Virus record (IMG/VR): IMGVR_UViG_3300013104_000001 | Span: 62,001 to 126,000 of that record | Length of the DNA: 64,000 nucleotides | Strand: one strand, 5' to 3' | Shown: in pieces, positions 681 through 61,250 of the stretch | Layout: every line of letters begins with the position of its first letter | Position numbering within the stretch: the stretch's first letter is position 1 | The notes under the pieces: generated by a model | Told to the model about the DNA's origin: nothing | Databases searched by the model: none | What the model saw: the letters and a program-made list of their open reading frames with translations, nothing else | Made by a program: the position numbers and the translations under genes

Positions 681-706
681 GGGAGGGGAAACCCTCCCTT
701 ATGCCG
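681..706 (+). terminator. 3'-end hairpin + TTATGCCG tag
   Basis: GGGAGGG-GAAA-CCCTCCC then TTATGCCG (699-706). Confidence 0.75.
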
Positions 707-718
707 TTTGGGGGTTAT

Positions 719-1246
719 ATGAGTTTAGTGATTTACAAAGACGGGTTATTAGTCGGGGACAGACATGGCTCACGTTATGTTGCCTCTTTTGACATGGTGC
801 GTGATGTCGTGAAGCTCTATAAGTCTAAGTGTGGCAGGATAGCACTAGCGGTTACCGGGCAAGTGTTGACTGATGAAGATCTACAAAAAGCATTTGATTT
901 CTTCATTAACTCGGTTACTGACTATCATTACCGTCATCTGGATTTGGACTACAGCAACAGATACGCCGAGGAAGATGCACTACGTATGGGGATGACGGGT
1001 CGTCACTTCATGATCATGACCCGCTCGCATATCTTCGCAGTTGAAGCAGGTATGTTGATCGATCTCAGTAATGAACCTTGGTACGCGACGGGTAGCGGGC
1101 AAGTAATGGCAGATATTTTCTTAACTGCGGGTTACTCGCCACAAAAGACCGTTGAGAATGTATCTAAAATTAACCAAGAAGTCAGCAAGCGTTTTACCCT
1201 TATCAATCAGGCTACGTTGAAGCCGCTTATTAAAGAGGTGGTATAA
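719..1246 (+). CDS. HslV/proteasome-like Ntn-hydrolase fold protein
   Basis: N-terminus MSLVIYKDGLLVGDR and ATGSG…AGYSPQKTV resemble phage HslV-like (MTTIA…AIGSG) proteins; start moved to 719. Confidence 0.55.
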   Translation: MSLVIYKDGLLVGDRHGSRYVASFDMVRDVVKLYKSKCGRIALAVTGQVLTDEDLQKAFDFFINSVTDYHYRHLDLDYSNRYAEEDALRMGMTGRHFMIMTRSHIFAVEAGMLIDLSNEPWYATGSGQVMADIFLTAGYSPQKTVENVSKINQEVSKRFTLINQATLKPLIKEVV

Positions 1247-1762
1247 ATGAGTAGTATCTTTGCCATCTCAGGCGATAACGTGGTTTACGCGCATCAACTG
1301 CTTAAGCTGAATGGCTTGCCGTTCACACCGGGTGAAGGTTCGTTATGGACACCGTGCGGTCGGTTCTTTCCTGTTTCACATCAGGGGCTGGCCTTGCTCG
1401 AGTATTTCCTTGAGCCGGGCAAACTGTCAGTTGATAGCTCCTACAACAACTACGTTTTAGGTATTCTGGCAACACCACATGGATTGTTGTACGAATACAC
1501 GTTGGTTGACAGTTGTGTTACTCGTCGTATTATCCCTCGTGGGAAAGGACTGCGCTACTGTCGTTCTAACGACCCTCAACTTGAGGAGTGCATGCAAGCC
1601 GCAATGGAAATCCATACCGAGCTTGTTGATGCCATGGACCTGGTTGCTAAATCTCGCAAGATCTTATTGAATGCGTACAAGTATACACTGTTGACTAATG
1701 TATATGCTGAAATGGCCGAGCGAAAGATCATCGGGAAACCGCCTTCGCTTATGCAAGCGTAA
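1247..1762 (+). CDS. hypothetical protein (possible degenerate partner/paralogue of the upstream Ntn-fold protein)
   Basis: GAGG RBS, abuts the previous stop. Confidence 0.65.
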   Translation: MSSIFAISGDNVVYAHQLLKLNGLPFTPGEGSLWTPCGRFFPVSHQGLALLEYFLEPGKLSVDSSYNNYVLGILATPHGLLYEYTLVDSCVTRRIIPRGKGLRYCRSNDPQLEECMQAAMEIHTELVDAMDLVAKSRKILLNAYKYTLLTNVYAEMAERKIIGKPPSLMQA

Positions 1763-1801
1763 AGAACCAATCTAACTTAACTTGTCCATAAAAGGAAATT
1801 T

Positions 1802-2254
1802 ATGAACACACGTATTGATGATGCACTAGATGTAATCGAGCTTGATGCTCAAAACGAACGTACTATGCTGTGCAGAAAGCAAGAAGCGACTCTGCCTGGT
1901 TATACAAGCAAAATGGCGGCTAAGCTTCAAAAGGTAATTGGGAAGGTTATTTGTAAGGCGAACAAATACAATGAAACTGTTGTTAGCAATACTCACTGTA
2001 CTGACCGTCTGTTTCTCTGTTTCGGTGATCGTATCACGCGTGTGCGCATTATGGCGTACGCAAAGGGCTCTGTTTATATTAGCGTTGACTGGGCTAGCTT
2101 CATTCGTGATCACAAACTACAGCACGTTGCCGGATATCAACTGGCAGGTCACCTTGGCGCAAGGATTGATGATTACACTGCTATTAGCCGTGGCGAAACG
2201 TTTAACCACGAATACGAATTCGTTTTAGTCAAAGCGTCTAAAGGGAAAGCCTGA
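1802..2254 (+). CDS. hypothetical protein
   Basis: AAGGA RBS; TGATG overlap with next gene. Confidence 0.7.
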   Translation: MNTRIDDALDVIELDAQNERTMLCRKQEATLPGYTSKMAAKLQKVIGKVICKANKYNETVVSNTHCTDRLFLCFGDRITRVRIMAYAKGSVYISVDWASFIRDHKLQHVAGYQLAGHLGARIDDYTAISRGETFNHEYEFVLVKASKGKA

Positions 2255-2676
2255 TGCCAAATCAAGGTATTATCACACACGTCCGGGAAATTGACAAAAA
2301 CCATGCTGCCGCCAAGGAGGTGGCAGTTTTACCTGATTACTGCAACGCGCTGGTAAGTACATTAATCAGCACGGCGTTTTATCACCGTAATGGTTTAGCT
2401 GATAAATCCATTCCACGTTTTGGTGAACACAAGTTCATCCAATACAACGACTTGGAAAAGGTCACTGACTGGTCTGTTGAGATCCGTAGTCACAGCTGCA
2501 TTGTTTACGAACTTGATATCCCACAATTCGTTCAGGATGCGGGTCTGATCAAATCGTTTATTGATATCGTCAGTTCTCACCTTGAGCTGTACTATCCTGA
2601 TTGTAAGGTCCTACTCGGAAATGTATTACCTCCGTGTCAGCTTACAATCCGTGTAGAGAAGAAAGAAGAAATATAA
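2254..2676 (+). CDS. hypothetical protein
   Basis: translationally coupled ORF. Confidence 0.7.
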   Translation: MPNQGIITHVREIDKNHAAAKEVAVLPDYCNALVSTLISTAFYHRNGLADKSIPRFGEHKFIQYNDLEKVTDWSVEIRSHSCIVYELDIPQFVQDAGLIKSFIDIVSSHLELYYPDCKVLLGNVLPPCQLTIRVEKKEEI

Positions 2677-2700
2677 TGCTTATTATATAGGTTGTAACTC

Positions 2701-2715
2701 TAAAGAGGTGATCCA
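2701..2715 (+). other. 14/15-nt complement of the 16S rRNA 3' end in an ORF-less spacer (candidate ncRNA element)
   Basis: TAAAGAGGTGATCCA versus TAAGGAGGTGATCCA; no ATG at RBS spacing. Confidence 0.45.
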
Positions 2716-2858
2716 TATCTCCCTTGGGTAAGGGTTAGAACCCGGCCGTGGCAGCATAGCCAAAGTCGTATAACTCAAGTCGACGGATTTTAGTTATTCG
2801 GCGAACTTTGCATTGTATATTGCTCTCCTTTTTCTACACAGCTCAAATCTCCATAGTC

Positions 2859-2891
2859 AAGGGGTAGGGATAACCTACCCCTTTTATGCCG
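2859..2891 (+). terminator. 3'-end hairpin + TTATGCCG tag
   Basis: AAGGGGTAGG-GATAA-CCTACCCCTT then TTATGCCG. Confidence 0.75.
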
Positions 2892-2907
2892 CATAGGGAC
2901 TTATTTC

Positions 2908-3228
2908 ATGTCAGAATTCTTTCACGCATATATATCGTACATCATCAATATTTTCATCTTTATCATGACATTCGCTTGGGTCTATTGCGGTAGTGGTGGC
3001 ACAAGTACTGCCAAAACTAAACTGGTGCGCTATGGTCTACCGACCGTCTTTGGTATTGGGATCTTATTAATGGTAGAGGGGATGGGTGCATTCGATGCTC
3101 ACCTGGAACGCGGTAAGTGTCGTGACCTACCTCCTGGTCAAGGGGTAATGTCAAACGACCGTTGTTACAAACGTATTGACGGGCCGGTGTACATACCTGC
3201 TAACACTGATGTATTTAAAGCGGAGTGA
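2908..3228 (+). CDS. hypothetical membrane protein
   Basis: two hydrophobic segments. Confidence 0.7.
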   Translation: MSEFFHAYISYIINIFIFIMTFAWVYCGSGGTSTAKTKLVRYGLPTVFGIGILLMVEGMGAFDAHLERGKCRDLPPGQGVMSNDRCYKRIDGPVYIPANTDVFKAE

Positions 3229-3232
3229 TCTC

Positions 3233-3433
3233 ATGCACGATGGATGGTTGTACATTGCATTATTCGTGCTGTGTTATATCTGGGGTTCGTACGGTCTACC
3301 TTATACCGGTAATCCATTGAAAGGTATATTGTACCCAGTATTATTTGCACTTGCTGTATGTTTTGCAGTAATGGGTATAAAGGCCTGTGTAGATGGTTCT
3401 ACTGGATATAAACCAAACTACCACGTCAGATAA
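3233..3433 (+). CDS. small hypothetical membrane protein
   Basis: GGAG RBS, ATG 3233, two hydrophobic segments. Confidence 0.65.
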   Translation: MHDGWLYIALFVLCYIWGSYGLPYTGNPLKGILYPVLFALAVCFAVMGIKACVDGSTGYKPNYHVR

Positions 3434-3438
3434 GTAAT

Positions 3439-3466
3439 AGGGAGGCTTCGGCCTCCCTTTATGCCG
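3439..3466 (+). terminator. 3'-end hairpin + TTATGCCG tag
   Basis: AGGGAGGC-TTCG-GCCTCCCT then TTATGCCG. Confidence 0.8.
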
Positions 3467-3534
3467 ATTTTTCTTTTTTGTTATTTCCGACATCATCTAA
3501 CCAATCATTTAGCCAAATATAAGAGGAATGCGTT

Positions 3535-4092
3535 ATGGGACGAATTACGAGCGATACCATCCTTGCTAAATTGCGGGAAGTATCGGAAGATAAGAAGGAA
3601 AGCCAATTTAGAGAGATTTGCTCTATCGCACAGACGGCAGCATTCAACGTCGAAGCGATTGTGGAACTCATCGCTTTATCTGGTGAGTTACATATCGACT
3701 TACTTAACCGAAAACATATTGATGCAATCATAGAGCCTCATTACGAAGGTAATATGAGATGCTACAGTCGGATTAGTCGCACCTCGTCTATACACACTGG
3801 CATGACACACCTTGCCGGTAATGCACACATCTACACCAACGACGCCGGTGAAGAGTCTGTCGGGATCGTGTGTGTCCTTAAATTTAAACGCGACTTCCTC
3901 CAGTCTTCACTATTGCCTGAAGTACGTTCTCACTTTATGAAAGCGATTCAAACTCGTATAGACACTCACGACTCAATCGTATTTCACTCTCACCCTGATT
4001 CGGAATGGGGTCCGGTTAGAGATATGCCGGGATGGCATGTGACCTCAGAAGTCCGTGATGACTCAATAATCGTTACTTTGAAATTCAAATAG
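3535..4092 (+). CDS. hypothetical protein
   Basis: GAGGA RBS, 185 aa. Confidence 0.7.
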   Translation: MGRITSDTILAKLREVSEDKKESQFREICSIAQTAAFNVEAIVELIALSGELHIDLLNRKHIDAIIEPHYEGNMRCYSRISRTSSIHTGMTHLAGNAHIYTNDAGEESVGIVCVLKFKRDFLQSSLLPEVRSHFMKAIQTRIDTHDSIVFHSHPDSEWGPVRDMPGWHVTSEVRDDSIIVTLKFK

Positions 4093-4119
4093 TTTTAACT
4101 TTAAGTTAAGGAAAGAAAA

Positions 4120-4821
4120 ATGCTTGTTGGTGTAGTCGATGCTGAATCCACAGACCTGGTTGATACTGCTGGTCTGTTTACCCTTTCAGGTATTATCCTG
4201 AATGTTACTGATCTGTCTGATATCGAAAAACAGATTGCTGATTATAAAGCAAAGAAAAAACCAGAAGGGTCGTTCCATGTGGTGTTTAACATCACGGAGC
4301 AATACCTGCTGGGTCGTACGTTCCTGGCGAGCACACAAGCGTGGTGGGTGAAGAAGACGACTAAGGCTGCACAAGCAGCGATTCTGGAACCGTCCACGCC
4401 ATTGAAAGCTGCCATGGAACAGTATGCCGAATGGATCCAATCTCTGATCGATCTTTCTAAAGAAGAACGCGGCCCGGATTCTTTGGTTAACATTTATTAC
4501 CGTGGTGATTTCGACGGTCGTGCTGTGGCTTCTCTGGCACGTGCCATTGATGTCAAACTGCCTTCTAATTATCGCTCTAATAAAGAAGTGCGTACGTACA
4601 TCGATGCCAAGCTGGATACCGATATTGGCTATATTCCGTGGCTCGGTTATCCCGCCGGTCTGGAGCGCCACAACTCTTTGGAAGACGTATTAATCGACGG
4701 CTTCGAGATGGCAGTGGCGTATCACATCAACCAACTGCAAAAGACCGCATCTAAAACAGTTGATGCCGAAATGCAAAGACTCTCGAAGAAATATCCTCCT
4801 AAGGAGATTCGTCATGGGTAA
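4120..4821 (+). CDS. DEDD(h)-type 3'-5' exonuclease/exoribonuclease
   Basis: ExoI VVDAEST, ExoII RGDFDG, ExoIII HNSLEDV. Confidence 0.75.
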   Translation: MLVGVVDAESTDLVDTAGLFTLSGIILNVTDLSDIEKQIADYKAKKKPEGSFHVVFNITEQYLLGRTFLASTQAWWVKKTTKAAQAAILEPSTPLKAAMEQYAEWIQSLIDLSKEERGPDSLVNIYYRGDFDGRAVASLARAIDVKLPSNYRSNKEVRTYIDAKLDTDIGYIPWLGYPAGLERHNSLEDVLIDGFEMAVAYHINQLQKTASKTVDAEMQRLSKKYPPKEIRHG

Positions 4822-5614
4822 AGAACTATCACCAGAAGATCTTAAAGCGCAACGTCAGGCACGTTTGGCGTACGTAGATAATAGCCGGTCGGAACTGCGG
4901 AAAAAGATCTTCGACAACGGTCAGTACGACAATTACCTGGAAGCGGCCAACGCGCATTTCAAATCGACCAATCGTTTGATCATGGCCGAGCAGGTGTTCT
5001 CTGAAGATAACCTGGCGCACTTGTACAGTCGTTTGGACCATCATGCGGTACCGGGAAATGGCGCGGTGTATTTGGTGGAGCTCGAAGCTGACCCATCGAA
5101 CTATCATCCGGCGCAGGATGAAATGCGGGTTTATATTGCCCTGGGTGTCTTTGACCGTACTTTCACACCAGACACCCCGTGGGAGATGCGGGTACAGAAC
5201 CGTTATTATCCCGACAACGTGTCTGTGTCATTGATCATGACTGACCTTGATGGACGTATTGCTTCTGACGCTATCCTTACTGGATTCCGTTCATTCGACC
5301 GTGGTGCGATCTATGACCGCTATGACGGTAAGCCACGTGAGCATAACCACCACCACAGTATCATGACGGGTATTGTCAACTATAATCGTCAGGTTATCTT
5401 TAATGTTTATAACAAGATCCGTGAGTACGGTGAAGCAGCAATCTTGTTGTTGGCTAAACGTCAGATCGCTCAGCAGGACCCAGAGCTCGGCGCAGTGTGG
5501 TTGCTTGCCGGGTTAAGAATGGGTGTTAACTGGAAACTGGAGAATCACATCGTGCTTAAAGAAGCGATGGATGCCATCATTGCCGAGGAGTGTGATCATG
5601 CTGACCATGTTTAG
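4814..5614 (+). CDS. hypothetical protein
   Basis: AAGGAG RBS, ATG 4814. Confidence 0.75.
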   Translation: MGKELSPEDLKAQRQARLAYVDNSRSELRKKIFDNGQYDNYLEAANAHFKSTNRLIMAEQVFSEDNLAHLYSRLDHHAVPGNGAVYLVELEADPSNYHPAQDEMRVYIALGVFDRTFTPDTPWEMRVQNRYYPDNVSVSLIMTDLDGRIASDAILTGFRSFDRGAIYDRYDGKPREHNHHHSIMTGIVNYNRQVIFNVYNKIREYGEAAILLLAKRQIAQQDPELGAVWLLAGLRMGVNWKLENHIVLKEAMDAIIAEECDHADHV

Positions 5615-6359
5615 AAAGTGGATTGGTGCATCCAGGTCTTTTAAAGAAGACGACGGATCTACTCGGGTAACCGGCGATCAATTCGAACTGACCTACGGGC
5701 GTTCTTTTCACAAGAAGCTTAACCGTAAAGTCGGTCACGGGTTTGGTTGTCATGTCGAAAACGGTGAGAAACTCTCGCTGGTACTGCGTTTGTATTTCTT
5801 TGTGCTGATTACCTGGACGAAGAAGCGTAAGGACCTGACCTGGGAGCAGGACGATAACTGTCCGAGTTACGGGTTTAATTACATGGACAACTCCATCTAC
5901 TTTTACCTGGGTAACGAGTCAGCTAAATCTGGCAAACACATCAGTATGCGTAAACGCATCAAAGAACTGAAGATGCCGTGGGCCCGTACGTTTCATAAAC
6001 GTGAGATTATGACAACGGGTGGGAAGTGGGTCAATAGCAATGATAATCCATCCAATGTCAATCAATGGGCATTCCCAGCGACCTACACCACTAAACACGG
6101 CGAAGTCCAGGAGCTGATGATCTCTGCTATCATCGAACGTATGACCTGGCGTTTGTCCTGGTTCCCGTGGCTACCTTTGTTTGCCAAACGTGTCCGTAGT
6201 GTTGATTTTAAATACGAAGGAAACGGCGGCAATGGAATTGGTCATGATCGCAGCGGTTGGAAAGGTGGAGTGATCGGCGGGAGCGTTAGCATGCTGGATA
6301 ACGAGCACAGTCCACAGGATACGATGGATCGTCTGATCAAAGAACAACACTACGGCTAA
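5598..6359 (+). CDS. hypothetical protein
   Basis: GAGGAG RBS, ATG 5598. Confidence 0.75.
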   Translation: MLTMFRKWIGASRSFKEDDGSTRVTGDQFELTYGRSFHKKLNRKVGHGFGCHVENGEKLSLVLRLYFFVLITWTKKRKDLTWEQDDNCPSYGFNYMDNSIYFYLGNESAKSGKHISMRKRIKELKMPWARTFHKREIMTTGGKWVNSNDNPSNVNQWAFPATYTTKHGEVQELMISAIIERMTWRLSWFPWLPLFAKRVRSVDFKYEGNGGNGIGHDRSGWKGGVIGGSVSMLDNEHSPQDTMDRLIKEQHYG

Positions 6360-6373
6360 TAAGGAAAAGTAAC

Positions 6374-7525
6374 ATGCGTCAATATTTAGACGGGGTTCGT
6401 TATATCTTTGAAAACGGATCTCAACGCGGTGACCGTACTGGCGTGGGTACGTTATCTGTCTTCTCCATGAAACAGACTTACGACCTGCGCCAAGGCTTCC
6501 CGTTGGTTACCAGTAAAAAGGTTCGTATGGATTACATCCTTCATGAGCTCATTTCATTCCTGTCAGGTAATCCTGATATGCCGGGTATCAGTATCTGGGA
6601 TGACTGGCGTGTGAAGGAAGAGATTTCTCGCGAAATCCCGATGGATAATCCCGAGCGACTTACTGCCTGGTGCGAACTGTCTGATCTCAAACGTCCGATC
6701 GCTGAAGCACAGCTCAATGGCATGGGTTCTGTGAAAGCGGCTCATGCTTTCCTGGATCAACAGGGAGTGCCACGTAATAAGAAAGTTGTCCTGGTACCAG
6801 AAGGTGCACTCAATGCACCATACGGGCCAGCCTGGCGCGCGTGGAAGGGTCGTAATGGCGAAGTGCATGATCAGATCGGTTATCTGCTAAACATGCTTAA
6901 AACGAATCCTACGAGCCGTCGTATGGTGTTGTCTGCATGGGATCCCGGTAACATGCCAGATGAATCCATCAGCCCGCAGGATAATGTCATTGCTGGTAAG
7001 CCATGCCTGACTCCATGTCACTGGGCGTTCGAGCTGTACACCGATGAGATCCCGGTTGAAGATCGTATCAATTGGATCGAGGCTAACGCACCTAGCGTCT
7101 GGGATGACTACAACGAATGGTCCCATCGGGGTCACTGGCTAGGTGATACGGATAATAAACGTCTGAATGAGTTTATGGATGATGCTAACGTACCTAAGTA
7201 TTACCTGGATCTGAAATACCATCAGCGTTCATGCGACTACATGGTTGGCGTACCGTATAACATCGCAAGCTATGCCGCACTGCAGCACATGTTTGCCAAC
7301 TCGGTGAACATGATCCCACGTATGTTAGAAGCGGACATGACTAACGTGCATATTTACAATTTCCATAAGGAGAATGCAATTATGCAAGCGAGTCGTACCC
7401 CGCGTGAGTTACCACAACTCACTCTTCTTACTCACTGTGAAAAGCTGGAGGATTACAAGCTGGAAGACTTTAAGTTGGAAGGCTATGACCCACATCCATT
7501 TATTAAATATGAGAGAGCTGTGTAA
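6374..7525 (+). CDS. thyA: thymidylate synthase (with insertions)
   Basis: DRTGVGT, FPLVTSKK, SRRMVLSAW, catalytic PCH, QRSCD, PYNIASY, HIY. Confidence 0.95.
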   Translation: MRQYLDGVRYIFENGSQRGDRTGVGTLSVFSMKQTYDLRQGFPLVTSKKVRMDYILHELISFLSGNPDMPGISIWDDWRVKEEISREIPMDNPERLTAWCELSDLKRPIAEAQLNGMGSVKAAHAFLDQQGVPRNKKVVLVPEGALNAPYGPAWRAWKGRNGEVHDQIGYLLNMLKTNPTSRRMVLSAWDPGNMPDESISPQDNVIAGKPCLTPCHWAFELYTDEIPVEDRINWIEANAPSVWDDYNEWSHRGHWLGDTDNKRLNEFMDDANVPKYYLDLKYHQRSCDYMVGVPYNIASYAALQHMFANSVNMIPRMLEADMTNVHIYNFHKENAIMQASRTPRELPQLTLLTHCEKLEDYKLEDFKLEGYDPHPFIKYERAV

Positions 7526-7582
7526 TCCTACCTCGTAGTAGGAAGGGGTAGGAACCCTGGACTAAATTGATGGAGCAATAAC

Positions 7583-7975
7583 ATGACCTGCAATGAAGAC
7601 TGTACTTTAGTGTTTGGTGAAGTGACGGGTAATCGAGATATCCTTACCTTAAAACAATTCTTTGCTAAGATGCGTGCTGGGCTCTCTAAAACGGATCGTC
7701 GCAGATACCGGATAGACGTAGTTCATTATAAGTTCGTCTCCAGGAATGGTGACATTGTTGTTGATAAAGTCAAGACAGTAGATATCTCAGTCCTGTTTGA
7801 TTTTAACTCACGTGAATCAAGTTGCTCGACTCTGTATACTCATCATGGCTTGGTGGCATCCGATCTTCTCTTACTATTAAAAGAAGAGCAAAAATGGGAT
7901 GGGTATTGTTTAGAGGTTGGGTTGCAAGGTGTGGTGTTAGAGGGGACTGATGAAGGGTTGTTAGAAGTCGCATGA
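7583..7975 (+). CDS. hypothetical protein
   Basis: GGAG RBS. Confidence 0.65.
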   Translation: MTCNEDCTLVFGEVTGNRDILTLKQFFAKMRAGLSKTDRRRYRIDVVHYKFVSRNGDIVVDKVKTVDISVLFDFNSRESSCSTLYTHHGLVASDLLLLLKEEQKWDGYCLEVGLQGVVLEGTDEGLLEVA

Positions 7976-7979
7976 ATTA

Positions 7980-8012
7980 GGGGAGGAGGGGAAACCTTCC
8001 TCCCTTATGCCG
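7980..8012 (+). terminator. 3'-end hairpin + TTATGCCG tag
   Basis: GGGGAGGAGGG-GAAA-CCTTCCTCCC then TTATGCCG. Confidence 0.75.
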
Positions 8013-8033
8013 ATAATAATGAAAGAAGTGAAC

Positions 8034-8067
8034 TGCAGAAAATCTCAGACCTACATGACACACGTGA
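8034..8067 (+). promoter_or_regulatory. putative phage-RNAP (early) promoter
   Basis: TGCAGAAAATCTCAGA-CCTACATGAC-acac-GTGA; one of nine copies. Confidence 0.7.
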
Positions 8068-8106
8068 ATTAACCAATCCAATTTAACCCTTGTAAGGAGC
8101 TTTATC

Positions 8107-9498: not shown

Positions 9499-9507
9499 TC
9501 TGTATCT

Positions 9508-9537
9508 GGGGAGGATTACCTCCCCTTTTCTTTTTTG
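9508..9537 (+). terminator. intrinsic terminator
   Basis: GGGGAGG-ATTA-CCTCCCC + T tract. Confidence 0.75.
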
Positions 9538-9556
9538 TTTGCATGGTAGGTGGAAT

Positions 9557-9880
9557 ATGCTCGGTACGGTAGAGGAAGTAGATAAGTGGTTTGATCAGAT
9601 GGTGAAGCCTGCTGACGAAGGGGTGTTCTGGATGGGAGGTCGTTTAACCGAAGTTCTGATCCCCATGGTTCGGGAACTGGATGCAATCTTGTTCTCAATG
9701 GACGAGCGTGAACACTTGGCATTGATCGATTACTTCATCAGTCGTTGTTACAACTGTCGGCTGCATACCTCATCGGGTCTGCGTATAAAAGAGATCATCG
9801 AGCCGTTACAAAGCGATCGGGTCTTTCCGGTTTACATCAATCTTTTTGTTAAGAAATATACCCTAACTCAGGAGAAGTAA
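9557..9880 (+). CDS. hypothetical protein
   Basis: AGGTGG RBS, ATG 9557; LIDYFIS motif. Confidence 0.65.
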   Translation: MLGTVEEVDKWFDQMVKPADEGVFWMGGRLTEVLIPMVRELDAILFSMDEREHLALIDYFISRCYNCRLHTSSGLRIKEIIEPLQSDRVFPVYINLFVKKYTLTQEK

Positions 9881-9881
9881 A

Positions 9882-11170: not shown

Positions 11171-11189
11171 CTAACGGAGTCGTAATCAA

Positions 11190-11855: not shown

Positions 11856-11867
11856 GGAACCAATATC

Positions 11868-12308: not shown

Positions 12309-12334
12309 TTAACTTATTGTAAGGAGCACCGACC

Positions 12335-13203: not shown

Positions 13204-13219
13204 CTGAATAGGTAAAGTA

Positions 13220-13336: not shown

Positions 13337-13343
13337 TGATGAC

Positions 13344-13371
13344 GGCCGGTGTCATGCCGGCCTTTATGCCG
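13344..13371 (+). terminator. 3'-end hairpin + TTATGCCG tag
   Basis: GGCCGGT…GCCGGCC then TTATGCCG. Confidence 0.7.
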
Positions 13372-13982: not shown

Positions 13983-13993
13983 AAGAGGGCACT

Positions 13994-14509: not shown

Positions 14510-14525
14510 CCTGCTGAGGTGATAC

Positions 14526-15053: not shown

Positions 15054-15058
15054 ACTTA

Positions 15059-15102
15059 GGGGAGGGCTTCGGCTCTCCCTTATGCTGCCTTATTTTTTTT
15101 TT
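15059..15102 (+). terminator. 3'-end hairpin + TTATGCTG variant + T tract
   Basis: GGGAGGGC-TTCG-GCTCTCCC-TTATGCTG. Confidence 0.75.
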
Positions 15103-17066: not shown

Positions 17067-17072
17067 GAACAC

Positions 17073-17099
17073 GGGTCCCTTCGGGGGCCCTTTATGCCG
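17073..17099 (+). terminator. 3'-end hairpin + TTATGCCG tag
   Basis: GGGTCCC-TTCG-GGGGCCC then TTTATGCCG. Confidence 0.75.
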
Positions 17100-19489: not shown

Positions 19490-19522
19490 AGGGACCTTCG
19501 GGTCCCTTTCTTTTTTATGTCT
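19490..19522 (+). terminator. intrinsic terminator (TTATGTC variant tag)
   Basis: AGGGACC-TTCG-GGTCCCT + T tract. Confidence 0.8.
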
Positions 19523-20766: not shown

Positions 20767-20800
20767 AAGAGGGAGGCTTCGGCTTCCCTCTTTTATTCCG
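20767..20800 (+). terminator. 3'-end hairpin + TTATTCCG variant
   Basis: AAGAGGGAGGC-TTCG-GCTTCCCTCTT. Confidence 0.75.
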
Positions 20801-23223: not shown

Positions 23224-23237
23224 TAAACCAGATCAAT

Positions 23238-23269
23238 AAGGGGGCTTCGGTCCCCTTTATTTTTTGCCG
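23238..23269 (+). terminator. intrinsic terminator (TTTTGCCG variant tag)
   Basis: AAGGGGGC-TTCG-GTCCCCTT + T tract. Confidence 0.75.
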
Positions 23270-31391: not shown

Positions 31392-31421
31392 GAGGAGGGG
31401 GATCCCCCTCCTCTTATGCCG
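31392..31421 (+). terminator. 3'-end hairpin + TTATGCCG tag
   Basis: GAGGAGGGG…CCCCTCCTC then TTATGCCG. Confidence 0.75.
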
Positions 31422-34631: not shown

Positions 34632-34649
34632 CCTACATTACTAAAGGGA
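34632..34649 (+). promoter_or_regulatory. putative phage-RNAP (early) promoter
   Basis: CCTACATTAC-taaa-GGGA, overlapping a hairpin followed by CTATGCCC. Confidence 0.55.
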
Positions 34650-34696
34650 TAGTGAAAGCTATCCCTTCTATGCCCATTATAAATTGAGGATTAGAA

Positions 34697-37462: not shown

Positions 37463-37513
37463 AGGGGGTCTGGTGAAAGCCATATCCCCTTAGGTTATGC
37501 TGTCTTTTTTTTT
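37463..37513 (+). terminator. imperfect hairpin + TTATGCTG + T tract
   Basis: AGGGGGT…ATCCCCT, TTATGCTG 37495-37502. Confidence 0.6.
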
Positions 37514-38100: not shown

Positions 38101-38127
38101 GGCGTCCTTCGGGACGCCTTTATGCCG
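38101..38127 (+). terminator. 3'-end hairpin + TTATGCCG tag
   Basis: GGCGTCC-TTCG-GGACGCC then TTTATGCCG. Confidence 0.8.
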
Positions 38128-38846: not shown

Positions 38847-38878
38847 AGGGGTAAGGAATCCTTACCCCTTTTATGCCG
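38847..38878 (+). terminator. 3'-end hairpin + TTATGCCG tag
   Basis: AGGGGTAAGG-AAT-CCTTACCCCT then TTTATGCCG. Confidence 0.75.
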
Positions 38879-41090: not shown

Positions 41091-41118
41091 GCCAGGGTTA
41101 GCCCTGGCTCTTATGCCG
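41091..41118 (+). terminator. 3'-end hairpin + TTATGCCG tag
   Basis: GCCAGGG-TTAG-CCCTGGC then TCTTATGCCG. Confidence 0.75.
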
Positions 41119-44446: not shown

Positions 44447-44515
44447 TATGTTACCTGCCTCCTGGGTAATTCCGGGAGGCTTTTTATACGGTCTTCATTT
44501 TTTGTTGAGGGTAGC

Positions 44516-51544: not shown

Positions 51545-51844
51545 ATGTGGGATAAACTACTGCGGGCCCTGACGTTAGTGGCTACGACGGATACCATCCC
51601 AGATAAAGAGACACGTTGCTTATCTGTACCACAGGTTCATCATCATTTAAAGTCCTGTGTACGCCGGGCCGTAACACGCATTGATGCTATCGTTGCTCAA
51701 CAGATCACGGGTGATGACACGTATGCTGAACTTGATCGCCTTATAAAGGAAGCGGGTTTAGAAGTGAAGGTGACACGTTTCACAGGCGGTAGTTTCAATC
51801 ATGGCAAAATAGCTACACCGAAGGGTTTTATTCTTTATGGTTAA
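51545..51844 (+). CDS. hypothetical protein
   Basis: C-terminus TPKGFILYG echoes TPKGRFVFG of the upstream ORF. Confidence 0.6.
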   Translation: MWDKLLRALTLVATTDTIPDKETRCLSVPQVHHHLKSCVRRAVTRIDAIVAQQITGDDTYAELDRLIKEAGLEVKVTRFTGGSFNHGKIATPKGFILYG

Positions 51845-52130
51845 TGATCCAGCAGTACTTCGGGCATTGATGTACATTGACGAACTCGAGCATACGTTAG
51901 TTGCATTGCAGCTTGCTAAAGCGAGTGCCGAGTATGATAACCGGTTGTATGGGTTATCGGTAAAAGACACGGATGAATTAATCAAGCGTTGTGCTCGTGC
52001 ACTTTATGTAAAAGCCAAGTTTGATCCGACCCGTGATCTGTTATTAAAAGTAATGGCTGATCGTACGCCATTAAAAGTAGTAATCGATAAGCAGGATGAG
52101 TACTACCGAGTAATCGGCAAAACGACATAA
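51837..52130 (+). CDS. hypothetical protein
   Basis: ends at the bidirectional hairpin. Confidence 0.6.
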   Translation: MVNDPAVLRALMYIDELEHTLVALQLAKASAEYDNRLYGLSVKDTDELIKRCARALYVKAKFDPTRDLLLKVMADRTPLKVVIDKQDEYYRVIGKTT

Positions 52131-52132
52131 GT

Positions 52133-52185
52133 CGGCATAGAGGAAGGCATGTGCCTTCCTCTAGCCTTTATGCCATCTTTTTTTT
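52133..52185. terminator. bidirectional hairpin carrying the TATGCC tag on both strands
   Basis: TAGAGGAAGGCA-TG-TGCCTTCCTCTA; TTATGCCA on + (52168-52175), CTATGCCG on - (52140-52133); between convergent genes. Confidence 0.8.
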
Positions 52186-54342
52186 TTACCAATCTAACGC
52201 TTTGTTACCGCGAGGTGATCCGACCGATACAGGCACGTCATCGCAAATAAGTTCTTGTGCTTCCAGGTCATCTAACCAGGCTTCCATTGAGGCGGACAGG
52301 AAACGGTGGTCAGTTTGGTCTGACTGTGAGAACAATGACTTATAATAGGTATCGTCTGCAAAGGCTTCTAGACCCACTGATTCAGCGATCTCAGTAACGT
52401 CGATAGTTGATCCATAACGATCAAGACCCATCAACTGATCAACCTGGGTTTTAGACCAGGCCATGATATCTTCAGAACGGGTTGAGATGTTCGGAAGGTT
52501 ACCGGTGTCCAATACAAAGTTGTAGATATACACATCGTCTTCTTGACCGATACGGTGCATACGAGATACCGCTTGTTCGTAGTGATGGAAACGCCAAGGT
52601 TTGTTAATCATCAACCCAGTGTTAGCCTCGACTATTGGAACAGCTTCAGCCAATGAGCGATAGGTTGCGACACCCGGATTAGCTGACTCGATGTTGCGCA
52701 GCTTTGCAACCATCTCCACAAGATCTTTGTTCGTCTCGCCGTAAACCACAACTGGACTGTATCCAAGCTGACGGCAGATATCTGCAGTTCTTTCCAGTGC
52801 AGGTACAAAGTCAGTGAAGATCAACGTCTTCTTCTTGGCGTTGTCGATGTATGTACCAAACGGAATGGCCTCAACGAGCTCTACGTGACACTGAGTGCGT
52901 TCTTTACCAAGTACCCTACCCAGACACTCCCCTTTGATCTTCAAGTCAACATACTTGATAACAGAGCGGGCATCTTTGAACGGCTTACGCATTGCCTCAG
53001 GGATGGTGGGGATAATCCGCTTGAGTTCGTAGTCGTTACAGTACTTGCTGTACGGACTCATCCATTCAGCCTGGAACCCCTGCTTGATAAACATCTCAAC
53101 ATACTCGTTGTACTTCTTGAAGTCCTCTTTCTCAGCAGGCGTCTTCAGCGTCCTTTCGAAGTAGTGGAGTGCGTCATCGTAGATCCGTTGATAAACAGGT
53201 TTGTTCTTGGTGTAGTACTCGAAGCGTTCTTTAATAAAGGCCATCATGATACGCTGGATGTTTTCCAAGGTATAATGCGCGCCATTCTTGATCTTCACCC
53301 TTACGGTAGTTTCGAAAGGTTTGGTATCCATGAAACGCGACTTCGGCACAGAGAAGCTTACAATACCCAAACGGTTCGCCAGGATGTCGTTCGCTTTGGT
53401 CGCTGTCTTACCCCAAATCTTACGCATGGCGAGTTCAACGCCGTCATTGAAACCTGGGATTATGCTACGGAACAACGGAACAGCTTCGGTGCCCATGGCG
53501 GTCATGGCGGTACCGGATGCCCAGACGATATCTTCAGACTTCGATTCGGTGCAGACGTCAATAAAGGTTTGGGTACGGATGGATTCTTTGGTTTTCTGGT
53601 TGAGGTTGTGTGACTCATCCAGGATGATCCCGACATTGGAGAAGCGATGTTCTTTTACCAATGCCAGTACTTCATCTAAACTTTCGTAATGTGCAACAAT
53701 CCACTTGGTACCTTTTACGTAAGGTTGCTTGTACTCAGCGACCCAAACCTGTTGCGGGGTAGTCAGCTCGGTTGTGATAGTCCTTTCCCAGACATCACGG
53801 GTGGCTTTCTTTGGCGCGATCACAATGACGTAATCTTTCTTACGACACAACATCGTCATGATTGAGCACAGGGTTTTACCCGCACCAGGTGCAGCAGCCA
53901 ACAACGCACCGCGTAGACGATACCGTGGCTTAGCGGTGTTGTAATAGTTCAGCCAGTTACGCTGTTCAGGTAATGGTGGCTTCTTAACGAACTTCAGCTG
54001 GGACAAATCGACGATGTCTTCGAAAGGTGCATCGATATCCCGCATCCAGGTATTCTTCTTTAACAGATCAAGGATCTTACCAAGACCGCGACGATCTGAA
54101 TACGTCTTATCGTGATCGTACAATCTTTGTAGAATGTACTGAACTTCGATTGCGAAGAAACTGTGGAAGACAATCTTACTTGAAGTAATTTCTTTAAAGA
54201 TCCAACCTGCGACTTTTGACGTCTTCCAGATCTTCTGAATGTCGCGTGTTACCAAAGGAGCATTGAAGCCGGTGATGGTAATTAGGTCGTTCTTTTCTTC
54301 GACATTAATAAGGCCTAATGCCTTACGTAAATAATCAAACAT
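52186..54342 (-). CDS. SF2 (SNF2/DEAD-like) helicase
   Basis: APGAGKT Walker A, LDESH motif II, SGT motif III, QAVSRMHRIGQ motif VI. Confidence 0.88.
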   Translation of the reverse strand: MFDYLRKALGLINVEEKNDLITITGFNAPLVTRDIQKIWKTSKVAGWIFKEITSSKIVFHSFFAIEVQYILQRLYDHDKTYSDRRGLGKILDLLKKNTWMRDIDAPFEDIVDLSQLKFVKKPPLPEQRNWLNYYNTAKPRYRLRGALLAAAPGAGKTLCSIMTMLCRKKDYVIVIAPKKATRDVWERTITTELTTPQQVWVAEYKQPYVKGTKWIVAHYESLDEVLALVKEHRFSNVGIILDESHNLNQKTKESIRTQTFIDVCTESKSEDIVWASGTAMTAMGTEAVPLFRSIIPGFNDGVELAMRKIWGKTATKANDILANRLGIVSFSVPKSRFMDTKPFETTVRVKIKNGAHYTLENIQRIMMAFIKERFEYYTKNKPVYQRIYDDALHYFERTLKTPAEKEDFKKYNEYVEMFIKQGFQAEWMSPYSKYCNDYELKRIIPTIPEAMRKPFKDARSVIKYVDLKIKGECLGRVLGKERTQCHVELVEAIPFGTYIDNAKKKTLIFTDFVPALERTADICRQLGYSPVVVYGETNKDLVEMVAKLRNIESANPGVATYRSLAEAVPIVEANTGLMINKPWRFHHYEQAVSRMHRIGQEDDVYIYNFVLDTGNLPNISTRSEDIMAWSKTQVDQLMGLDRYGSTIDVTEIAESVGLEAFADDTYYKSLFSQSDQTDHRFLSASMEAWLDDLEAQELICDDVPVSVGSPRGNKALDW

Positions 54343-54417: not shown

Positions 54418-54442
54418 TCTCATGCCTACATTACATAGGTGA
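54418..54442 (+). promoter_or_regulatory. putative phage-RNAP (early) promoter
   Basis: TCTCATG-CCTACATTAC-atag-GTGA. Confidence 0.7.
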
Positions 54443-58634: not shown

Positions 58635-58664
58635 AGGCCAGGGTAATTCCTGGCCTTTATGCCG
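58635..58664 (+). terminator. 3'-end hairpin + TTATGCCG tag
   Basis: AGGCCAGG…CCTGGCCT then TTATGCCG. Confidence 0.75.
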
Positions 58665-59725: not shown

Positions 59726-59736
59726 GGTAACGCATC

Positions 59737-60117
59737 ATGGATCAGTTTGAAACTGTAAAAGAAGTACAGGAACCAATGGTCGATCGTGCAGTAGCCACTC
59801 GGGCTATCATGATGGGTTCAGCAATCCGTGCAGCCTCTGTGGCTGCCGGTGTTGCGGTCGGTGCAGCAGCTCTCAAGATCAAACCCAAAGCTGCGATCAA
59901 GGTAGCGCTTCTGCCGGCAGCAATCGAGCTGGCAGTTACCTATGCTTCAATCCGTGCAGCTGATGACGATCAACTGGAAGAGATCGCATTAGAGCGCGAC
60001 AACAAAAAGAACTTCAATGACGCTGCGAAGAACTTCGTGTTCGGCAGTGTCGCTCTCGTGGTGGGCGTATTGATCGCTCGCCAAATCTCAGTGCCGGAGA
60101 AACCGGCTGCAGAATAA
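59737..60117 (+). CDS. Ala-rich membrane protein, FxxVKxxxEP family
   Basis: QFETVKEVQEP then hydrophobic helices. Confidence 0.75.
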   Translation: MDQFETVKEVQEPMVDRAVATRAIMMGSAIRAASVAAGVAVGAAALKIKPKAAIKVALLPAAIELAVTYASIRAADDDQLEEIALERDNKKNFNDAAKNFVFGSVALVVGVLIARQISVPEKPAAE

Positions 60118-60130
60118 AAAGGTAATAGCC

Positions 60131-60319
60131 ATGTTTAACAACAAGAAATGTGTAGAAGAACCAACCTGTGAAGTTGAACTGCGCGTTGGTGTGCAAATCG
60201 TTGGCATGGCTATGGGCTGTGTTCTCGCTCAAAGTGAGAACACCTGGACCAAGGCCTGTGGCGTAGGTTTGACTACTGCGTCATTCCTGTCCCTGATTAA
60301 GAAACTGTCTAAGATCTAA
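60131..60319 (+). CDS. small membrane protein, FxxVKxxxEP family
   Basis: MFNNKKCVEEP then two hydrophobic segments. Confidence 0.65.
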   Translation: MFNNKKCVEEPTCEVELRVGVQIVGMAMGCVLAQSENTWTKACGVGLTTASFLSLIKKLSKI

Positions 60320-60387
60320 GCAATACCTGCATCACAAACAAACCAAACATACTTTAATTAACCTAACTGTAAATAAGCGAGATTACC

Positions 60388-60678
60388 ATGAAAACCGAAA
60401 CTATCACTTCAATCAACGAAACTGCTAAAACTGCTGGCGCAACTGTTGAGAACGCGGTAAAGAACGAAATGTTCGACGCTGTTAAAACTGTGGCTGAGCC
60501 AACCGTTGCAAAGAAAATCGTTAAACGCACTCTGATCGGTGCTGGCGTTCTGGCGCTGGTAGCCGGTGGCTTCTACGGCTACAAAGCCCTGAAGAAAACC
60601 AAATCGATCACTGTCGTCACTGACGAAACATCAAACGACCCAGCAGTCGATGTCGTGGTTGAAGAAACCGCAGCATAA
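60388..60678 (+). CDS. single-pass membrane protein, FxxVKxxxEP family
   Basis: MFDAVKTVAEP then TM LIGAGVLALVAGGFYG. Confidence 0.75.
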   Translation: MKTETITSINETAKTAGATVENAVKNEMFDAVKTVAEPTVAKKIVKRTLIGAGVLALVAGGFYGYKALKKTKSITVVTDETSNDPAVDVVVEETAA

Positions 60679-60686
60679 TTTTGTGA

Positions 60687-60731
60687 GGGCTAGGGAATCC
60701 TAGCCCCACTCTTTCCTCTTTCTTTTTTTTT
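60687..60731 (+). terminator. intrinsic terminator
   Basis: GGGCTAGG-GAAT-CCTAGCCC followed by pyrimidine/T tract. Confidence 0.7.
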
Positions 60732-60745
60732 GTTTCGAGGTGCGT

Positions 60746-61216
60746 ATGCACGTTATTACTACCGGTGCAATTTCTATCCTGCTGTTCATCACGTTTCTGG
60801 CTTTATCAGAATGGCGGTTACGTGCCAGCAAAAACTTAATCTTTCGCGAGATCACCAAGATTGCTTATTCAGTGTTACGCTACACGGAAATAAAAGAAGT
60901 CACACCAGAGATCTATCTCATCTGTGCTGAGCTACAATCACGCATGATCAAGATGGGTAACTTTGCAGTGACACCCCGTGATAAAGAAATTGCCATGACC
61001 ATTGCTAAGTACATTGCTGTGTTTGGTAATCAGCGTGTACGTGATCCCGTTGTGTTGTTAACGGTTATCGCCAGACGCTTAAATGAGTTTGATGGTATAT
61101 CAGCTAAGTCACTTACAACCACCAATGGACGCATGGAACTCGTTATAGGACACGACGATGCAACTGACTATGATCGTATCATCTTTCGCTTCAACTCTAC
61201 GCAGACTTTATTCTAG
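60746..61216 (+). CDS. N-terminally anchored membrane protein
   Basis: GAGGTG RBS; N-terminal TM. Confidence 0.7.
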   Translation: MHVITTGAISILLFITFLALSEWRLRASKNLIFREITKIAYSVLRYTEIKEVTPEIYLICAELQSRMIKMGNFAVTPRDKEIAMTIAKYIAVFGNQRVRDPVVLLTVIARRLNEFDGISAKSLTTTNGRMELVIGHDDATDYDRIIFRFNSTQTLF

Positions 61217-61217
61217 G

Positions 61218-61250
61218 CGGCATAAAGGGCAGGGTTTCCCCCGCCCTCTT
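61218..61250 (-). terminator. 3'-end hairpin + TTATGCCG tag (minus strand)
   Basis: minus strand reads AGGGCGGGG-GAAA-CCCTGCCCT-TTATGCCG right after the stop of 61251..61895. Confidence 0.75.

What the first reader, a model, noticed from the sequence alone, without database searches (positions are those of the whole stretch)
681..61250. Dispersed 3'-end element: variable GC hairpin followed by an invariant TTATGCCG tag
Seen: 12 exact copies of TTATGCCG directly after a hairpin in intergenic gaps, almost always right at a gene end (699, 2884, 3459, 8005, 13364, 17092, 31414, 38120, 38871, 41111, 58657, and 61225-61218 on the minus strand). Variants occur at 15080 and 37495 (TTATGCTG), 52168 (TTATGCCA), 34668, 20793, 23262, 19515 and 44484. 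Stem sequences differ while the tag is conserved, and many copies have only 2-4 T before ATGCCG, unlike classic U-tract terminators. The tag follows transcript direction: the minus-strand gene has it on the minus strand, and the convergent junction at 52133-52175 has it on both strands. Established: phiKZ-like phages use their own RNAPs, late promoters contain TATG, and mRNA must leave the phage nucleus. Inference: a sequence-specific termination signal for phage RNAP, a fused terminator/late promoter, or a protein-bound mRNA 3' tag for processing, stability or nuclear export.
Basis: partly seen in the sequence, partly recalled or inferred. Interest (0 to 1): 0.75.

Follow-up and report, generated by a model that had tools for sequence, protein, structure and literature searches.

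The report
Jumbo-phage terminator hairpin with conserved tail
The repeated "hairpin + TTATGCCG" element is this nucleus-forming jumbo phage's version of a transcription terminator already described in phiKZ and 201phi2-1, in which the RNA ends inside the conserved tail; how the tail works is still untested.

Summary
TTATGCCG occurs 12 times in the window (1.8 expected) and 35 times in the 287-kb genome, about 30 of them directly after a GC-rich hairpin.

A motif search on hairpins alone recovers YTTATGCC. With variants there are 76 hairpin+tag elements at gene ends: 46 between same-direction genes and 30 on the 38 sides of convergent junctions. None lies in the 19 divergent junctions. Without a hairpin the tag occurs at chance frequency.

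The phage is an uncultivated chimallivirus related to Erwinia phage RAY. In 17 orthologous pairs the stems drift or are replaced (65% identity) while the tag stays (93%, partly inflated by how I located it).

The element matches the published phiKZ terminator motif (hairpin-YTTATKYYGT) and 201phi2-1 motif A. Published 3' ends fall inside the tag, 4-8 nt after the stem, in 8 of 8 sites in 201phi2-1 and about 10 in phiKZ. No phiKZ start site maps to the tag's G.

So this is a terminator whose short U stretch is followed by a conserved termination-point box. It is not a fused late promoter. A role as an RNA 3' tag is not excluded. It is a new member of a known kind, and the mechanism of the box is open.

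The parts
680..706 (+). hairpin GGGGAGGGG-AAA-CCCTCCC(T) + tag TTATGCCG (699-706)
   Evidence: MFE -16.3; 26 nt after the stop of ORF 382-672; ortholog in RAY keeps the tag while the stem changes
2859..2891 (+). hairpin + tag TTATGCCG (2884-2891)
   Evidence: MFE -18.2; RAY ortholog has compensatory stem changes and the same tag
3439..3466 (+). hairpin (UUCG loop) + tag TTATGCCG (3459-3466)
   Evidence: MFE -15.8; RAY ortholog has a different stem and the same tag
7978..8012 (+). hairpin + tag TTATGCCG (8005-8012)
   Evidence: MFE -23.8; follows ORF 7583-7975
13340..13371 (+). hairpin + tag TTATGCCG (13364-13371)
   Evidence: MFE -14.2
15057..15087 (+). hairpin + variant tag TTATGCTG (15080-15087)
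   Evidence: MFE -18.5; 26 nt after the stop of ORF 14526-15053; RAY has TTATGCCA here
17073..17099 (+). hairpin + tag TTATGCCG (17092-17099), behind the EPS-depolymerase/tail gene 15165-17066
   Evidence: the RAY ortholog has an unrelated stem and an identical TTTATGCCGCCCTA
19490..19522 (+). hairpin + T-run + variant tag TTATGTCT (19515-19522)
   Evidence: the only tag element in window 1-20000 that also meets the canonical T-run rule
20767..20800 (+). hairpin + variant tag TTATTCCG (20793-20800)
   Evidence: followed at 20834 by the promoter-like CCTACATTAC
23235..23269 (+). hairpin + variant tag TTTTGCCG (23262-23269)
31392..31421 (+). hairpin + tag TTATGCCG (31414-31421)
   Evidence: MFE -19.3; the RAY ortholog has an unrelated stem and the same TTATGCCGT
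34644..34675 (+). hairpin + variant tag CTATGCCC (34668-34675), directly behind a promoter-like CCTACATTAC (34632-34641)
   Evidence: conserved in RAY
37463..37502 (+). hairpin, 4-nt spacer, variant tag TTATGCTG (37495-37502), then a T-run
38101..38127 (+). hairpin + tag TTATGCCG (38120-38127)
   Evidence: RAY stem differs, tag TTTATGCCGG is identical
38847..38878 (+). hairpin + tag TTATGCCG (38871-38878)
   Evidence: RAY has compensatory stem changes and the same tag
41091..41118 (+). hairpin + tag TTATGCCG (41111-41118), followed at 41136 by the promoter-like CCTACATTAC
44457..44491 (+). hairpin + weak variant TTATACGG (44484-44491)
   Evidence: below the PWM threshold used for the counts
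52123..52175 (.). bidirectional terminator at a convergent junction. One hairpin (52138-52163). Tag TTATGCCA on the plus strand (52168-52175). Tags CTATGCCG (52133-52140) and TTATGTCG (52123-52130) on the minus strand.
   Evidence: lies between ORF 51837-52130 (+) and the helicase gene 52186-54342 (-)
58635..58664 (+). hairpin + tag TTATGCCG (58657-58664)
   Evidence: RAY ortholog keeps TTTATGCCGG
61218..61249 (-). hairpin + tag TTATGCCG (61218-61225) on the minus strand, behind minus-strand gene 61251-61895. On the plus strand the same hairpin is followed by a plain T-rich tail.
   Evidence: RAY ortholog at L001:21990

Best explanation
The hairpin and tag together form one unit: the standard factor-independent terminator of this chimallivirus.

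Proposed mechanism:
- The GC-rich hairpin forms in the nascent RNA.
- The first part of the tag (UUAU) is a short substitute for the usual U-tract.
- The rest (G-C-C | G, then W-Y-Y) marks where the polymerase stops.
- The RNA ends inside the tag, about 6-8 nt past the stem, as ...UUAUG(C)(C).
- The last conserved letters (G and the following W-Y-Y) lie at or beyond the RNA end. They would then act on the transcribing polymerase or on the DNA, as a pause or arrest signal of the pyrimidine-then-G type, rather than on the finished RNA.

Shown here: the enrichment, the coupling to hairpins, the restriction to gene 3' ends, the conservation against drifting stems, and the match to the published phiKZ and 201phi2-1 motifs.

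Shown in relatives by published mapping: the 3' ends lie inside the tag.

Inferred: the same 3' end in this phage, and the pause mechanism.
For: - Enrichment: 12 copies against 1.8 expected. 37 hairpin-adjacent TAT[GA]YYG against 2.1 expected. Unsupervised EM recovers the motif.
- Location: 46 tandem and 30 convergent-side elements, 0 in 19 divergent junctions. Tags without a hairpin are at chance, 296 hits against 307 +/- 20 in shuffles.
- Spacing: in 47 of 76 elements the second C lies 6-9 nt from the stem end.
- Conservation: in 17 pairs with Erwinia phage RAY the tag is 93% identical, the stem region 65% and the downstream sequence 54%. Three stems are entirely replaced.
- The G after TTATGCC, which was not used for selection, is present in 57 of 76 elements, followed by W-Y-Y.
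- Literature: the phiKZ motif BCCYCCCCHWWDGGGRRGGBYTTATKYYGT was found in 61 mapped terminators (PMC10914365). 201phi2-1 motif A was found in 59 (PMC11512511).
- All 8 published 201phi2-1 termination coordinates fall at TTTATGY[Y]G.
- phiKZ Table S4 coordinates fall between TA[T]G and TATGY[Y].
- Weak direct hint: in run X25, a probable RNA library of a relative about 90% alike, a 3.2-kb contig over the capsid gene (depth 18) ends on the last base of the tag. Depth then drops to 5-7.
- The genome encodes homologues of the nvRNAP beta-like subunit, chimallin and the phiKZ-type capsid protein. Sigma-70-like sites are at chance.
Against: - There are no RNA data for this phage. The 3' end is transferred from phages of other genera.
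- ONT-cappable-seq ends are good to about +/-2 nt, so it is not settled whether the final G is in the RNA.
- The mapped 3' ends could come from processing rather than release.
- The tag is not universal in the family. SPN3US uses plain T-runs, and EL and Goslar show it only weakly.
- This phage also has about 10-15 tagless terminators, so the box is not obligatory.
- 201phi2-1 terminators of this type stop the host polymerase too, so the box need not be read by a phage-specific feature.
Confidence: 0.8

Rival explanations
1. Fused terminator and late promoter: after release, the non-virion RNA polymerase restarts at the G of the tag's TATG, the phiKZ late-promoter core.
For: TATG with G as +1 is necessary for phiKZ late promoters, and the beta-like subunit gp123 binds it in the non-template strand (PMC4666361; PMC12809450). 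Most pocket residues are kept or conservatively replaced in this phage's homologue. In many tandem junctions the next gene starts 10-100 nt after the tag.
Against: No element lies in 19 divergent junctions, where promoters must be, yet 30 of 38 convergent sides carry one. The tag without a hairpin is at chance. No phiKZ start site maps to a tag's G; start sites lie 25-50 nt downstream at separate early, middle or late promoters. P119L has no hairpin. In this phage a separate promoter-like CCTACATTAC motif follows several tags. TATG is necessary but not sufficient.
Confidence: 0.08
2. RNA 3' tag: the terminal ...hairpin-UUAUGCC is bound by a phage protein that protects the mRNA or hands it to the export route of the phage nucleus.
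For: Published 3' ends leave most of the tag on the RNA. The phage encodes chimallin, so its mRNAs must leave a protein shell. The tag is conserved across several genera.
Against: Conservation continues 1-4 nt beyond the mapped end, as G, W, Y, Y. SPN3US, which also encodes phiKZ-type RNA polymerase subunits, lacks the tag. The only nucleus-associated RNA-binding protein studied by eCLIP (ChmC, PhiPA3) binds near start codons with no motif (PMC11077065). Polycistronic read-through RNAs would carry the tag internally.
Confidence: 0.1
3. Processing site: the polymerase reads through, and an endonuclease cuts at YY|G or an exonuclease trims back to the hairpin, producing the mapped ends.
For: 3' end mapping cannot tell release from processing. 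phiKZ ends scatter over 4-8 nt.
Against: The same elements reduce downstream reporter expression in uninfected P. chlororaphis. Ends 6-8 nt past a stem match normal terminator geometry. Exonuclease trimming would not need a conserved sequence.
Confidence: 0.07
4. Dispersed mobile or REP-like repeat, or a compositional accident.
For: Many copies lie in intergenic DNA.
Against: Stems differ between copies and between orthologs, and only the 8-nt tail is fixed. Shuffles give 1.8 copies against 12 observed. The strand follows transcription. No Rfam family matches.
Confidence: 0.01

Closest known systems
phiKZ conserved intrinsic-terminator motif, 5'-BCCYCCCCHWWDGGGRRGGBYTTATKYYGT-3' (Putzeys et al. 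2024, PMC10914365)
   Same: A GC-rich stem-loop directly followed by (Y)TTAT, then K-Y-Y-G(-T). TTATGCCG(T) fits TTATKYYG(T) letter for letter. It lies at the ends of transcription units, occurs as bidirectional copies at convergent genes, and the phage has its own RNA polymerases.
   Different: This phage fixes GCC where phiKZ mostly has GTT, GTC or GCT, in line with 47% against 37% GC. The T after the G is weak here. The stems are mostly purine-rich in the 5' arm (GGGAGG...CCTCCC), the reverse of the phiKZ consensus. No RNA mapping exists for this phage.
201phi2-1 terminator motif A, alone or with motif B (PMC11512511)
   Same: The same hairpin + TTTATGYYG. The eight published termination coordinates fall on the second Y. 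Bidirectional, stem-extended versions exist in both phages.
   Different: Different genus and host. In 201phi2-1 the function was tested in a reporter assay with the host polymerase; nothing has been tested for this phage.
Canonical bacterial intrinsic terminator (GC hairpin + U-tract of 7-9 nt)
   Same: A GC-rich hairpin, a U-rich start to the tail, an RNA end about 7-8 nt past the stem, and no factor needed. The 201phi2-1 copies work with the host polymerase.
   Different: There are only 2-4 U, and the distal half of the tail is an invariant, GC-rich GCCG. Only 1 of 8 elements passes the usual T-run rule. From my own knowledge: terminators with imperfect distal U-tracts, such as t500, are thought to release by forward translocation.
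phiKZ late promoter core TATG, with G as +1 (Yakunina et al. 2015; de Martin Garrido et al. 2026)
   Same: It contains the same four letters. The protein pocket that reads them is partly conserved in this phage.
   Different: The genomic positions are opposite: 3' ends against 5' ends of genes. It is preceded by a GC hairpin, not AT-rich DNA. No start sites were mapped at tags in phiKZ.
Elemental pause consensus of bacterial RNA polymerase, G-10 Y-1 G+1 (recalled from memory: Larson et al. 2014, Vvedenskaya et al. 2014; not checked here)
   Same: The mapped 3' end is a pyrimidine and the next template-encoded base is G, whether read as TAT|G or as TATGCC|G.
   Different: No pausing data exist for phage multisubunit polymerases. 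The G-10 position falls in the pyrimidine-rich 3' arm here.

Membership tests
phiKZ-type (chimallivirus) conserved terminator motif | GC-rich stem-loop immediately upstream | tested here: met
   All 12 exact window copies and 76 elements genome-wide have one. MFE is -12 to -24 kcal/mol.
phiKZ-type (chimallivirus) conserved terminator motif | Tail (Y)TTAT-K-Y-Y-G(-T) right after the stem | tested here: met
   EM consensus is YTTATGCC. G follows in 57 of 76 elements. The T after G is only weakly preferred: 30 of 76 are T and 28 are A.
phiKZ-type (chimallivirus) conserved terminator motif | Sits at 3' ends of transcription units, with bidirectional copies at convergent genes | tested here: met
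   46 tandem, 30 of 38 convergent sides, 0 of 19 divergent junctions. This rests on my own rough gene map.
phiKZ-type (chimallivirus) conserved terminator motif | RNA 3' ends map at the motif | tested here: inconclusive
   No RNA run holds this phage. One contig of a relative in a probable RNA library ends on the tag. In 201phi2-1 and phiKZ the published ends fall in the tag.
phiKZ-type (chimallivirus) conserved terminator motif | Host genome is a phiKZ-like phage with its own multisubunit RNA polymerases | tested here: met
   Homologues of nvRNAP gp123 (E 2e-46), chimallin (E 2e-25) and the capsid protein gp120 (E 1e-65) are present. The closest relatives are Erwinia Agricanvirus phages.
Canonical bacterial intrinsic terminator | U-tract: at least 5 T in the 8 nt after the stem | tested here: not met
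   Only 1 of 8 tag elements in window 1-20000 passes on the right strand. Tags carry 2-4 T.
Canonical bacterial intrinsic terminator | Factor-independent release by bacterial RNA polymerase | not testable with these tools
   Reported for eight 201phi2-1 elements in P. chlororaphis. Not tested for this phage.
phiKZ late promoter (TATG, G = +1) | TATG present | tested here: met
   Present in 70 of 76 elements.
phiKZ late promoter (TATG, G = +1) | Lies upstream of genes, including divergent junctions, and works without a hairpin | tested here: not met
   0 of 19 divergent junctions carry it. Hairpin-less tags are at chance.
phiKZ late promoter (TATG, G = +1) | Transcripts start at the G | tested here: not met
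   For phiKZ only: none of the listed start sites (Table S3, P008-P066) lies at the G of a terminator tag. Not testable for this phage.
REP/MITE-like dispersed repeat | Copies share the whole sequence, stem included | tested here: not met
   Stems differ between copies and orthologs; only the tail is fixed.

The most novel reading that the evidence does not exclude
The tag is a polymerase-level signal that reuses the late-promoter code. The non-template TATG would be caught by the same beta-lobe pocket of the non-virion RNA polymerase that selects late start sites. That would halt the elongating enzyme a few nucleotides past a hairpin, so it releases without a long U-tract. The four letters would then mean 'start' without a hairpin and 'stop' behind one. 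This would be the first sequence-specific termination box described for a phage multisubunit RNA polymerase.
Probability: 0.15. Interest if true: 0.7.

Novelty: new member of a known kind. Interest (0 to 1): 0.35.

Why it matters
For annotation, hairpin + YTATGYYR gives a reliable, strand-specific marker of transcription-unit ends in Agricanvirus-like and phiKZ-like jumbo phages. Standard terminator finders miss most copies. The ATG inside the tag can also mislead gene callers.

For biology, the tail is held fixed across phage genera while the stems drift, and its conservation runs past the mapped RNA end. That makes a specific question testable: how do the unusual split RNA polymerases of nucleus-forming phages terminate, and does that involve the TATG-binding pocket? 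The published descriptions I read (phiKZ, 201phi2-1) noted the motif but did not address the mechanism.

Tried and rejected
- RNA evidence for this phage. Two run searches found only DNA or metagenome holders, plus probable RNA libraries of relatives with 6-11% of words. The single read-laying run gave only contigs, with one suggestive contig end and no read ends.
- Supplementary tables of the two journal papers are not held. Ceyssens 2014 is not held. The bioRxiv supplement supplied the phiKZ tables instead. I read only phiKZ T001-T033 and P008-P066.
- The tag as a stand-alone motif. An 8-mer PWM at 8 bits or more gives 296 hits against 307 in shuffles, so it has no meaning without the hairpin.
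- Universality in the family is rejected. SPN3US (40 kb) has many hairpins with plain T-runs and no tag. AR9 and T4 also have none.
- Link between tag presence and the gp123 TATG pocket. Tag-bearing phages keep F151, K158, H331, S334 and Q466, with conservative aromatic swaps, and SPN3US is the most divergent. With 7 sequences at about 28% identity and phylogeny confounded, this is only suggestive.
- Rfam has no family in the window.
- Division of labour between tag and T-run terminators by polymerase class. Units behind early-promoter-like motifs end in both kinds, and late structural genes end in tags. No clean split emerges.
- Near-identical DNA search in the phage collection found nothing useful, because the phage's own record is masked.

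Full report
**1. What is in the sequence**

TTATGCCG occurs 12 times in the window, at exactly the coordinates given. Shuffles give 1.77 +/- 1.16 copies and never more than 4. The window is bases 62001-126000 of a single 287,406-bp contig with 46.8% GC. It is an IMG/VR virus record with direct terminal repeats, judged complete.

Genome-wide there are 35 copies, 27 on the plus strand and 8 on the minus strand. About 30 sit directly behind a GC-rich hairpin. The five without a hairpin lie in coding sequence.

To avoid circularity I took the best hairpin within 60 nt after each predicted gene end (114 hairpins) and ran an unsupervised EM motif search on the 22 nt around the hairpin's 3' edge. It returned YTTATGCC.

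With a hairpin score of at least 17 and a motif score of at least 8 bits there are 87 elements, 76 of them outside genes. The commonest words are:
- TTATGCCG: 31
- CTATGCCG: 7
- TTATGCTG: 7
- TTATGCCA: 5
- TTATGCCC: 4

The base after TTATGCC was not used for selection. It is G in 57 of 76 elements, followed by W, Y, Y.

The 8-mer motif on its own is not enriched: 296 hits against 307 +/- 20 in shuffled genomes. Only the combination of hairpin and tag is special. TAT[GA]YYG lies within -4..+9 of a hairpin end 37 times against 2.1 expected.

**2. Where the element sits**

My rough gene map has 290 genes, mostly on the plus strand. Among the intergenic elements:
- 46 lie between two genes of the same direction.
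- 30 lie on the 38 sides of the 19 convergent junctions.
- None lies in the 19 divergent junctions.
- One is antisense.

The element always points away from the gene it follows. It therefore marks 3' ends, not 5' ends.

The second C of the tag lies 6-9 nt from the stem end in 47 of 76 cases, the usual distance between a terminator stem and the release point.

The tool's canonical terminator rule (at least 5 T in 8 nt) finds only one of the eight tag elements in window 1-20000 on the right strand. Sigma-70-like promoter matches are at chance, 31 against 32.5. No Rfam family matches the window.

**3. What the phage is**

A virion protein in the window is 83% identical to those of Erwinia Agricanvirus phages (RAY, Ea35-70, Simmy50 and others), 61% to Salmonella phage SA002, and about 35% to Goslar.

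The genome encodes homologues of three phiKZ proteins:
- nvRNAP beta-like subunit gp123, at 10315-11913
- major capsid protein gp120, at 6874-8991
- the nuclear-shell protein chimallin, at 206382-207905

It is therefore an uncultivated chimallivirus. The best DNA holder is a rhizosphere metagenome.

**4. Conservation**

RAY carries the same hairpin+tag at orthologous sites. I anchored 17 orthologous pairs through the upstream coding sequence, which is 67-92% identical.
- The eight tag positions are 93% identical, the 20 nt of hairpin before them 65%, and the 11 nt after them 54%.
- The tag was located by a pattern, which inflates that first figure. Even so, 11 of 17 pairs share the full TTATGCCG.
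- Three pairs (genome 79091, 93413, 100119) have entirely different stems in front of an identical tail.

Across other phages, tags after hairpins are enriched in RAY (9 against 0.4 expected), SA002 (11 against 0.4), phiKZ (17 against 1.2) and 201phi2-1 (8 against 0.5).
- They are weak in Goslar and EL, although Goslar's annotated terminators show TTATGCTGT and TATATCGT.
- They are absent in SPN3US, which uses long T-runs, and in AR9 and T4.

**5. What is already published**

Putzeys et al. 2024 mapped phiKZ transcript ends by ONT-cappable-seq. They reported that 61 intrinsic terminators share 5'-BCCYCCCCHWWDGGGRRGGBYTTATKYYGT-3', a stem-loop followed by TTAT (PMC10914365). TTATGCCG(T) is an exact instance of TTATKYYG(T).

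The 201phi2-1 study found the same motif (motif A) in 59 of 132 terminators. It also showed that eight terminators work in uninfected P. chlororaphis (PMC11512511).

That paper gives eight termination coordinates. Laid on the genome record, all eight fall inside the tag, at hairpin-TTTATGY[Y]G.

From the preprint's Table S4 I took the phiKZ coordinates in the first 50 kb. For the tag-bearing terminators the end lies between TA[T]G and TATGY[Y], 4-8 nt after the stem.

Table S3 lists the phiKZ start sites. None of those I read (P008-P066) is at the G of a terminator tag. The next starts lie 25-50 nt downstream, at separate early (..TATATTAC..), middle or late promoters. The model late promoter P119L has no hairpin in front.

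**6. Direct evidence for this lineage**

No RNA run holds this phage.

In run X25, a probable RNA library with a relative about 90% alike, a 3,219-nt contig covering the capsid gene at depth 18 ends at L024:3845. That is the last base of the TTATGCCG behind the capsid gene (genome 9211-9218). The next contigs have depth 5-7.

This is one contig of uncertain library type, so it is a hint and not proof.

**7. How it most likely works**

The element is a factor-independent terminator. The hairpin is followed by a short U-rich start (UUAU) and a fixed, GC-rich termination-point box.

By homology the RNA ends as ...UUAUG(C)(C). The mapped end is a pyrimidine and the next base is G. From my own knowledge, this is the signature of the elemental pause of bacterial multisubunit polymerases.

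Conservation of the G and of the W-Y-Y beyond it argues that part of the signal is read on the DNA or by the transcribing enzyme, not on the finished RNA.

Both polymerase classes probably use it. Late structural genes end in tags (capsid, the tail/depolymerase gene at 15165-17066, the virion protein operon at 61251-63228). So do several units that begin at early-promoter-like motifs.

**8. A speculative link**

- In this phage's homologue F151, K158, H331, S334, Q466 and S144 are kept.
- H185, Y399 and Y406 are replaced by Y, H and F.
- SPN3US, which lacks the tag, is the most divergent.

The same pocket could therefore catch the tag's TATG during elongation. Against this, the authors describe the pocket as incomplete in the transcribing complex, and my comparison rests on 7 sequences at about 28% identity. 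I give this reading about 15%.

**9. Verdict**

The element is not new as a kind. It is the phiKZ/201phi2-1 terminator motif, here in an Agricanvirus-like phage with its own fixed version of the tail.

What remains open, and moderately interesting, is why the tail is conserved and how the phage polymerases use it.

Noticed in passing
window 20834-20843, 34632-34641, 41136-41145, 44881-44890, 54425-54434 (+); about 15 intergenic copies genome-wide: The motif CCTACATTAC-N4-GTGAT recurs in an A/T-rich context, often 20-30 nt after a hairpin+tag. It resembles the phiKZ early (virion RNA polymerase) promoter ...TATATTAC... listed in Table S3 of the phiKZ preprint. It is probably this phage's early promoter.
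   Followed up: partly
window 34632-34675 (+): A promoter-like CCTACATTAC sits directly against a hairpin + CTATGCCC, just upstream of the gene starting at 34697. The arrangement is conserved in RAY. It could be a very short leader RNA or an attenuator.
   Followed up: partly
window 699-721 (+); four cases genome-wide: The ATG inside the tag opens mechanical ORFs such as 701..1246. An in-frame ATG at 719, behind GGGGG, is the likelier true start. Gene callers may start genes inside terminators here.
   Followed up: partly
window 9508-9535, and the plus strand of 61228-61260: Some terminator hairpins have a plain T-rich tail and no tag, for example GGGGAGGATTACCTCCCC TTTTCTTTTTT. There are about 10-15 genome-wide, so two terminator styles coexist. 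At 61218-61249 one hairpin has a tag on the minus strand and a T-rich tail on the plus strand.
   Followed up: partly
window 52123-52140 (-): Two tags lie in tandem behind one hairpin on the minus strand: CTATGCCG, then TTATGTCG 10 nt further on.
   Followed up: no
window 1-20000: Sigma-70-like promoter matches are at chance level, 31 found against 32.5 expected. This fits a phage that does not rely on the host polymerase.
   Followed up: no
L024:3790-3898 (genome 9163-9271): In run X25, a probable RNA library of a relative about 90% alike, the contig over the capsid gene ends exactly at the end of the tag. The next contig starts about 53 nt later, roughly 28 nt after the CCTACATTAC motif.
   Followed up: partly
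window 15165-17066 and 17175-19478 (+): An EPS-depolymerase-like tail protein (phrog_4250, E 1e-218) and an adhesin-like tail protein sit side by side, each closed by its own hairpin+tag. The host is probably an exopolysaccharide-producing Erwinia- or Pantoea-like bacterium of plants or soil.
   Followed up: no
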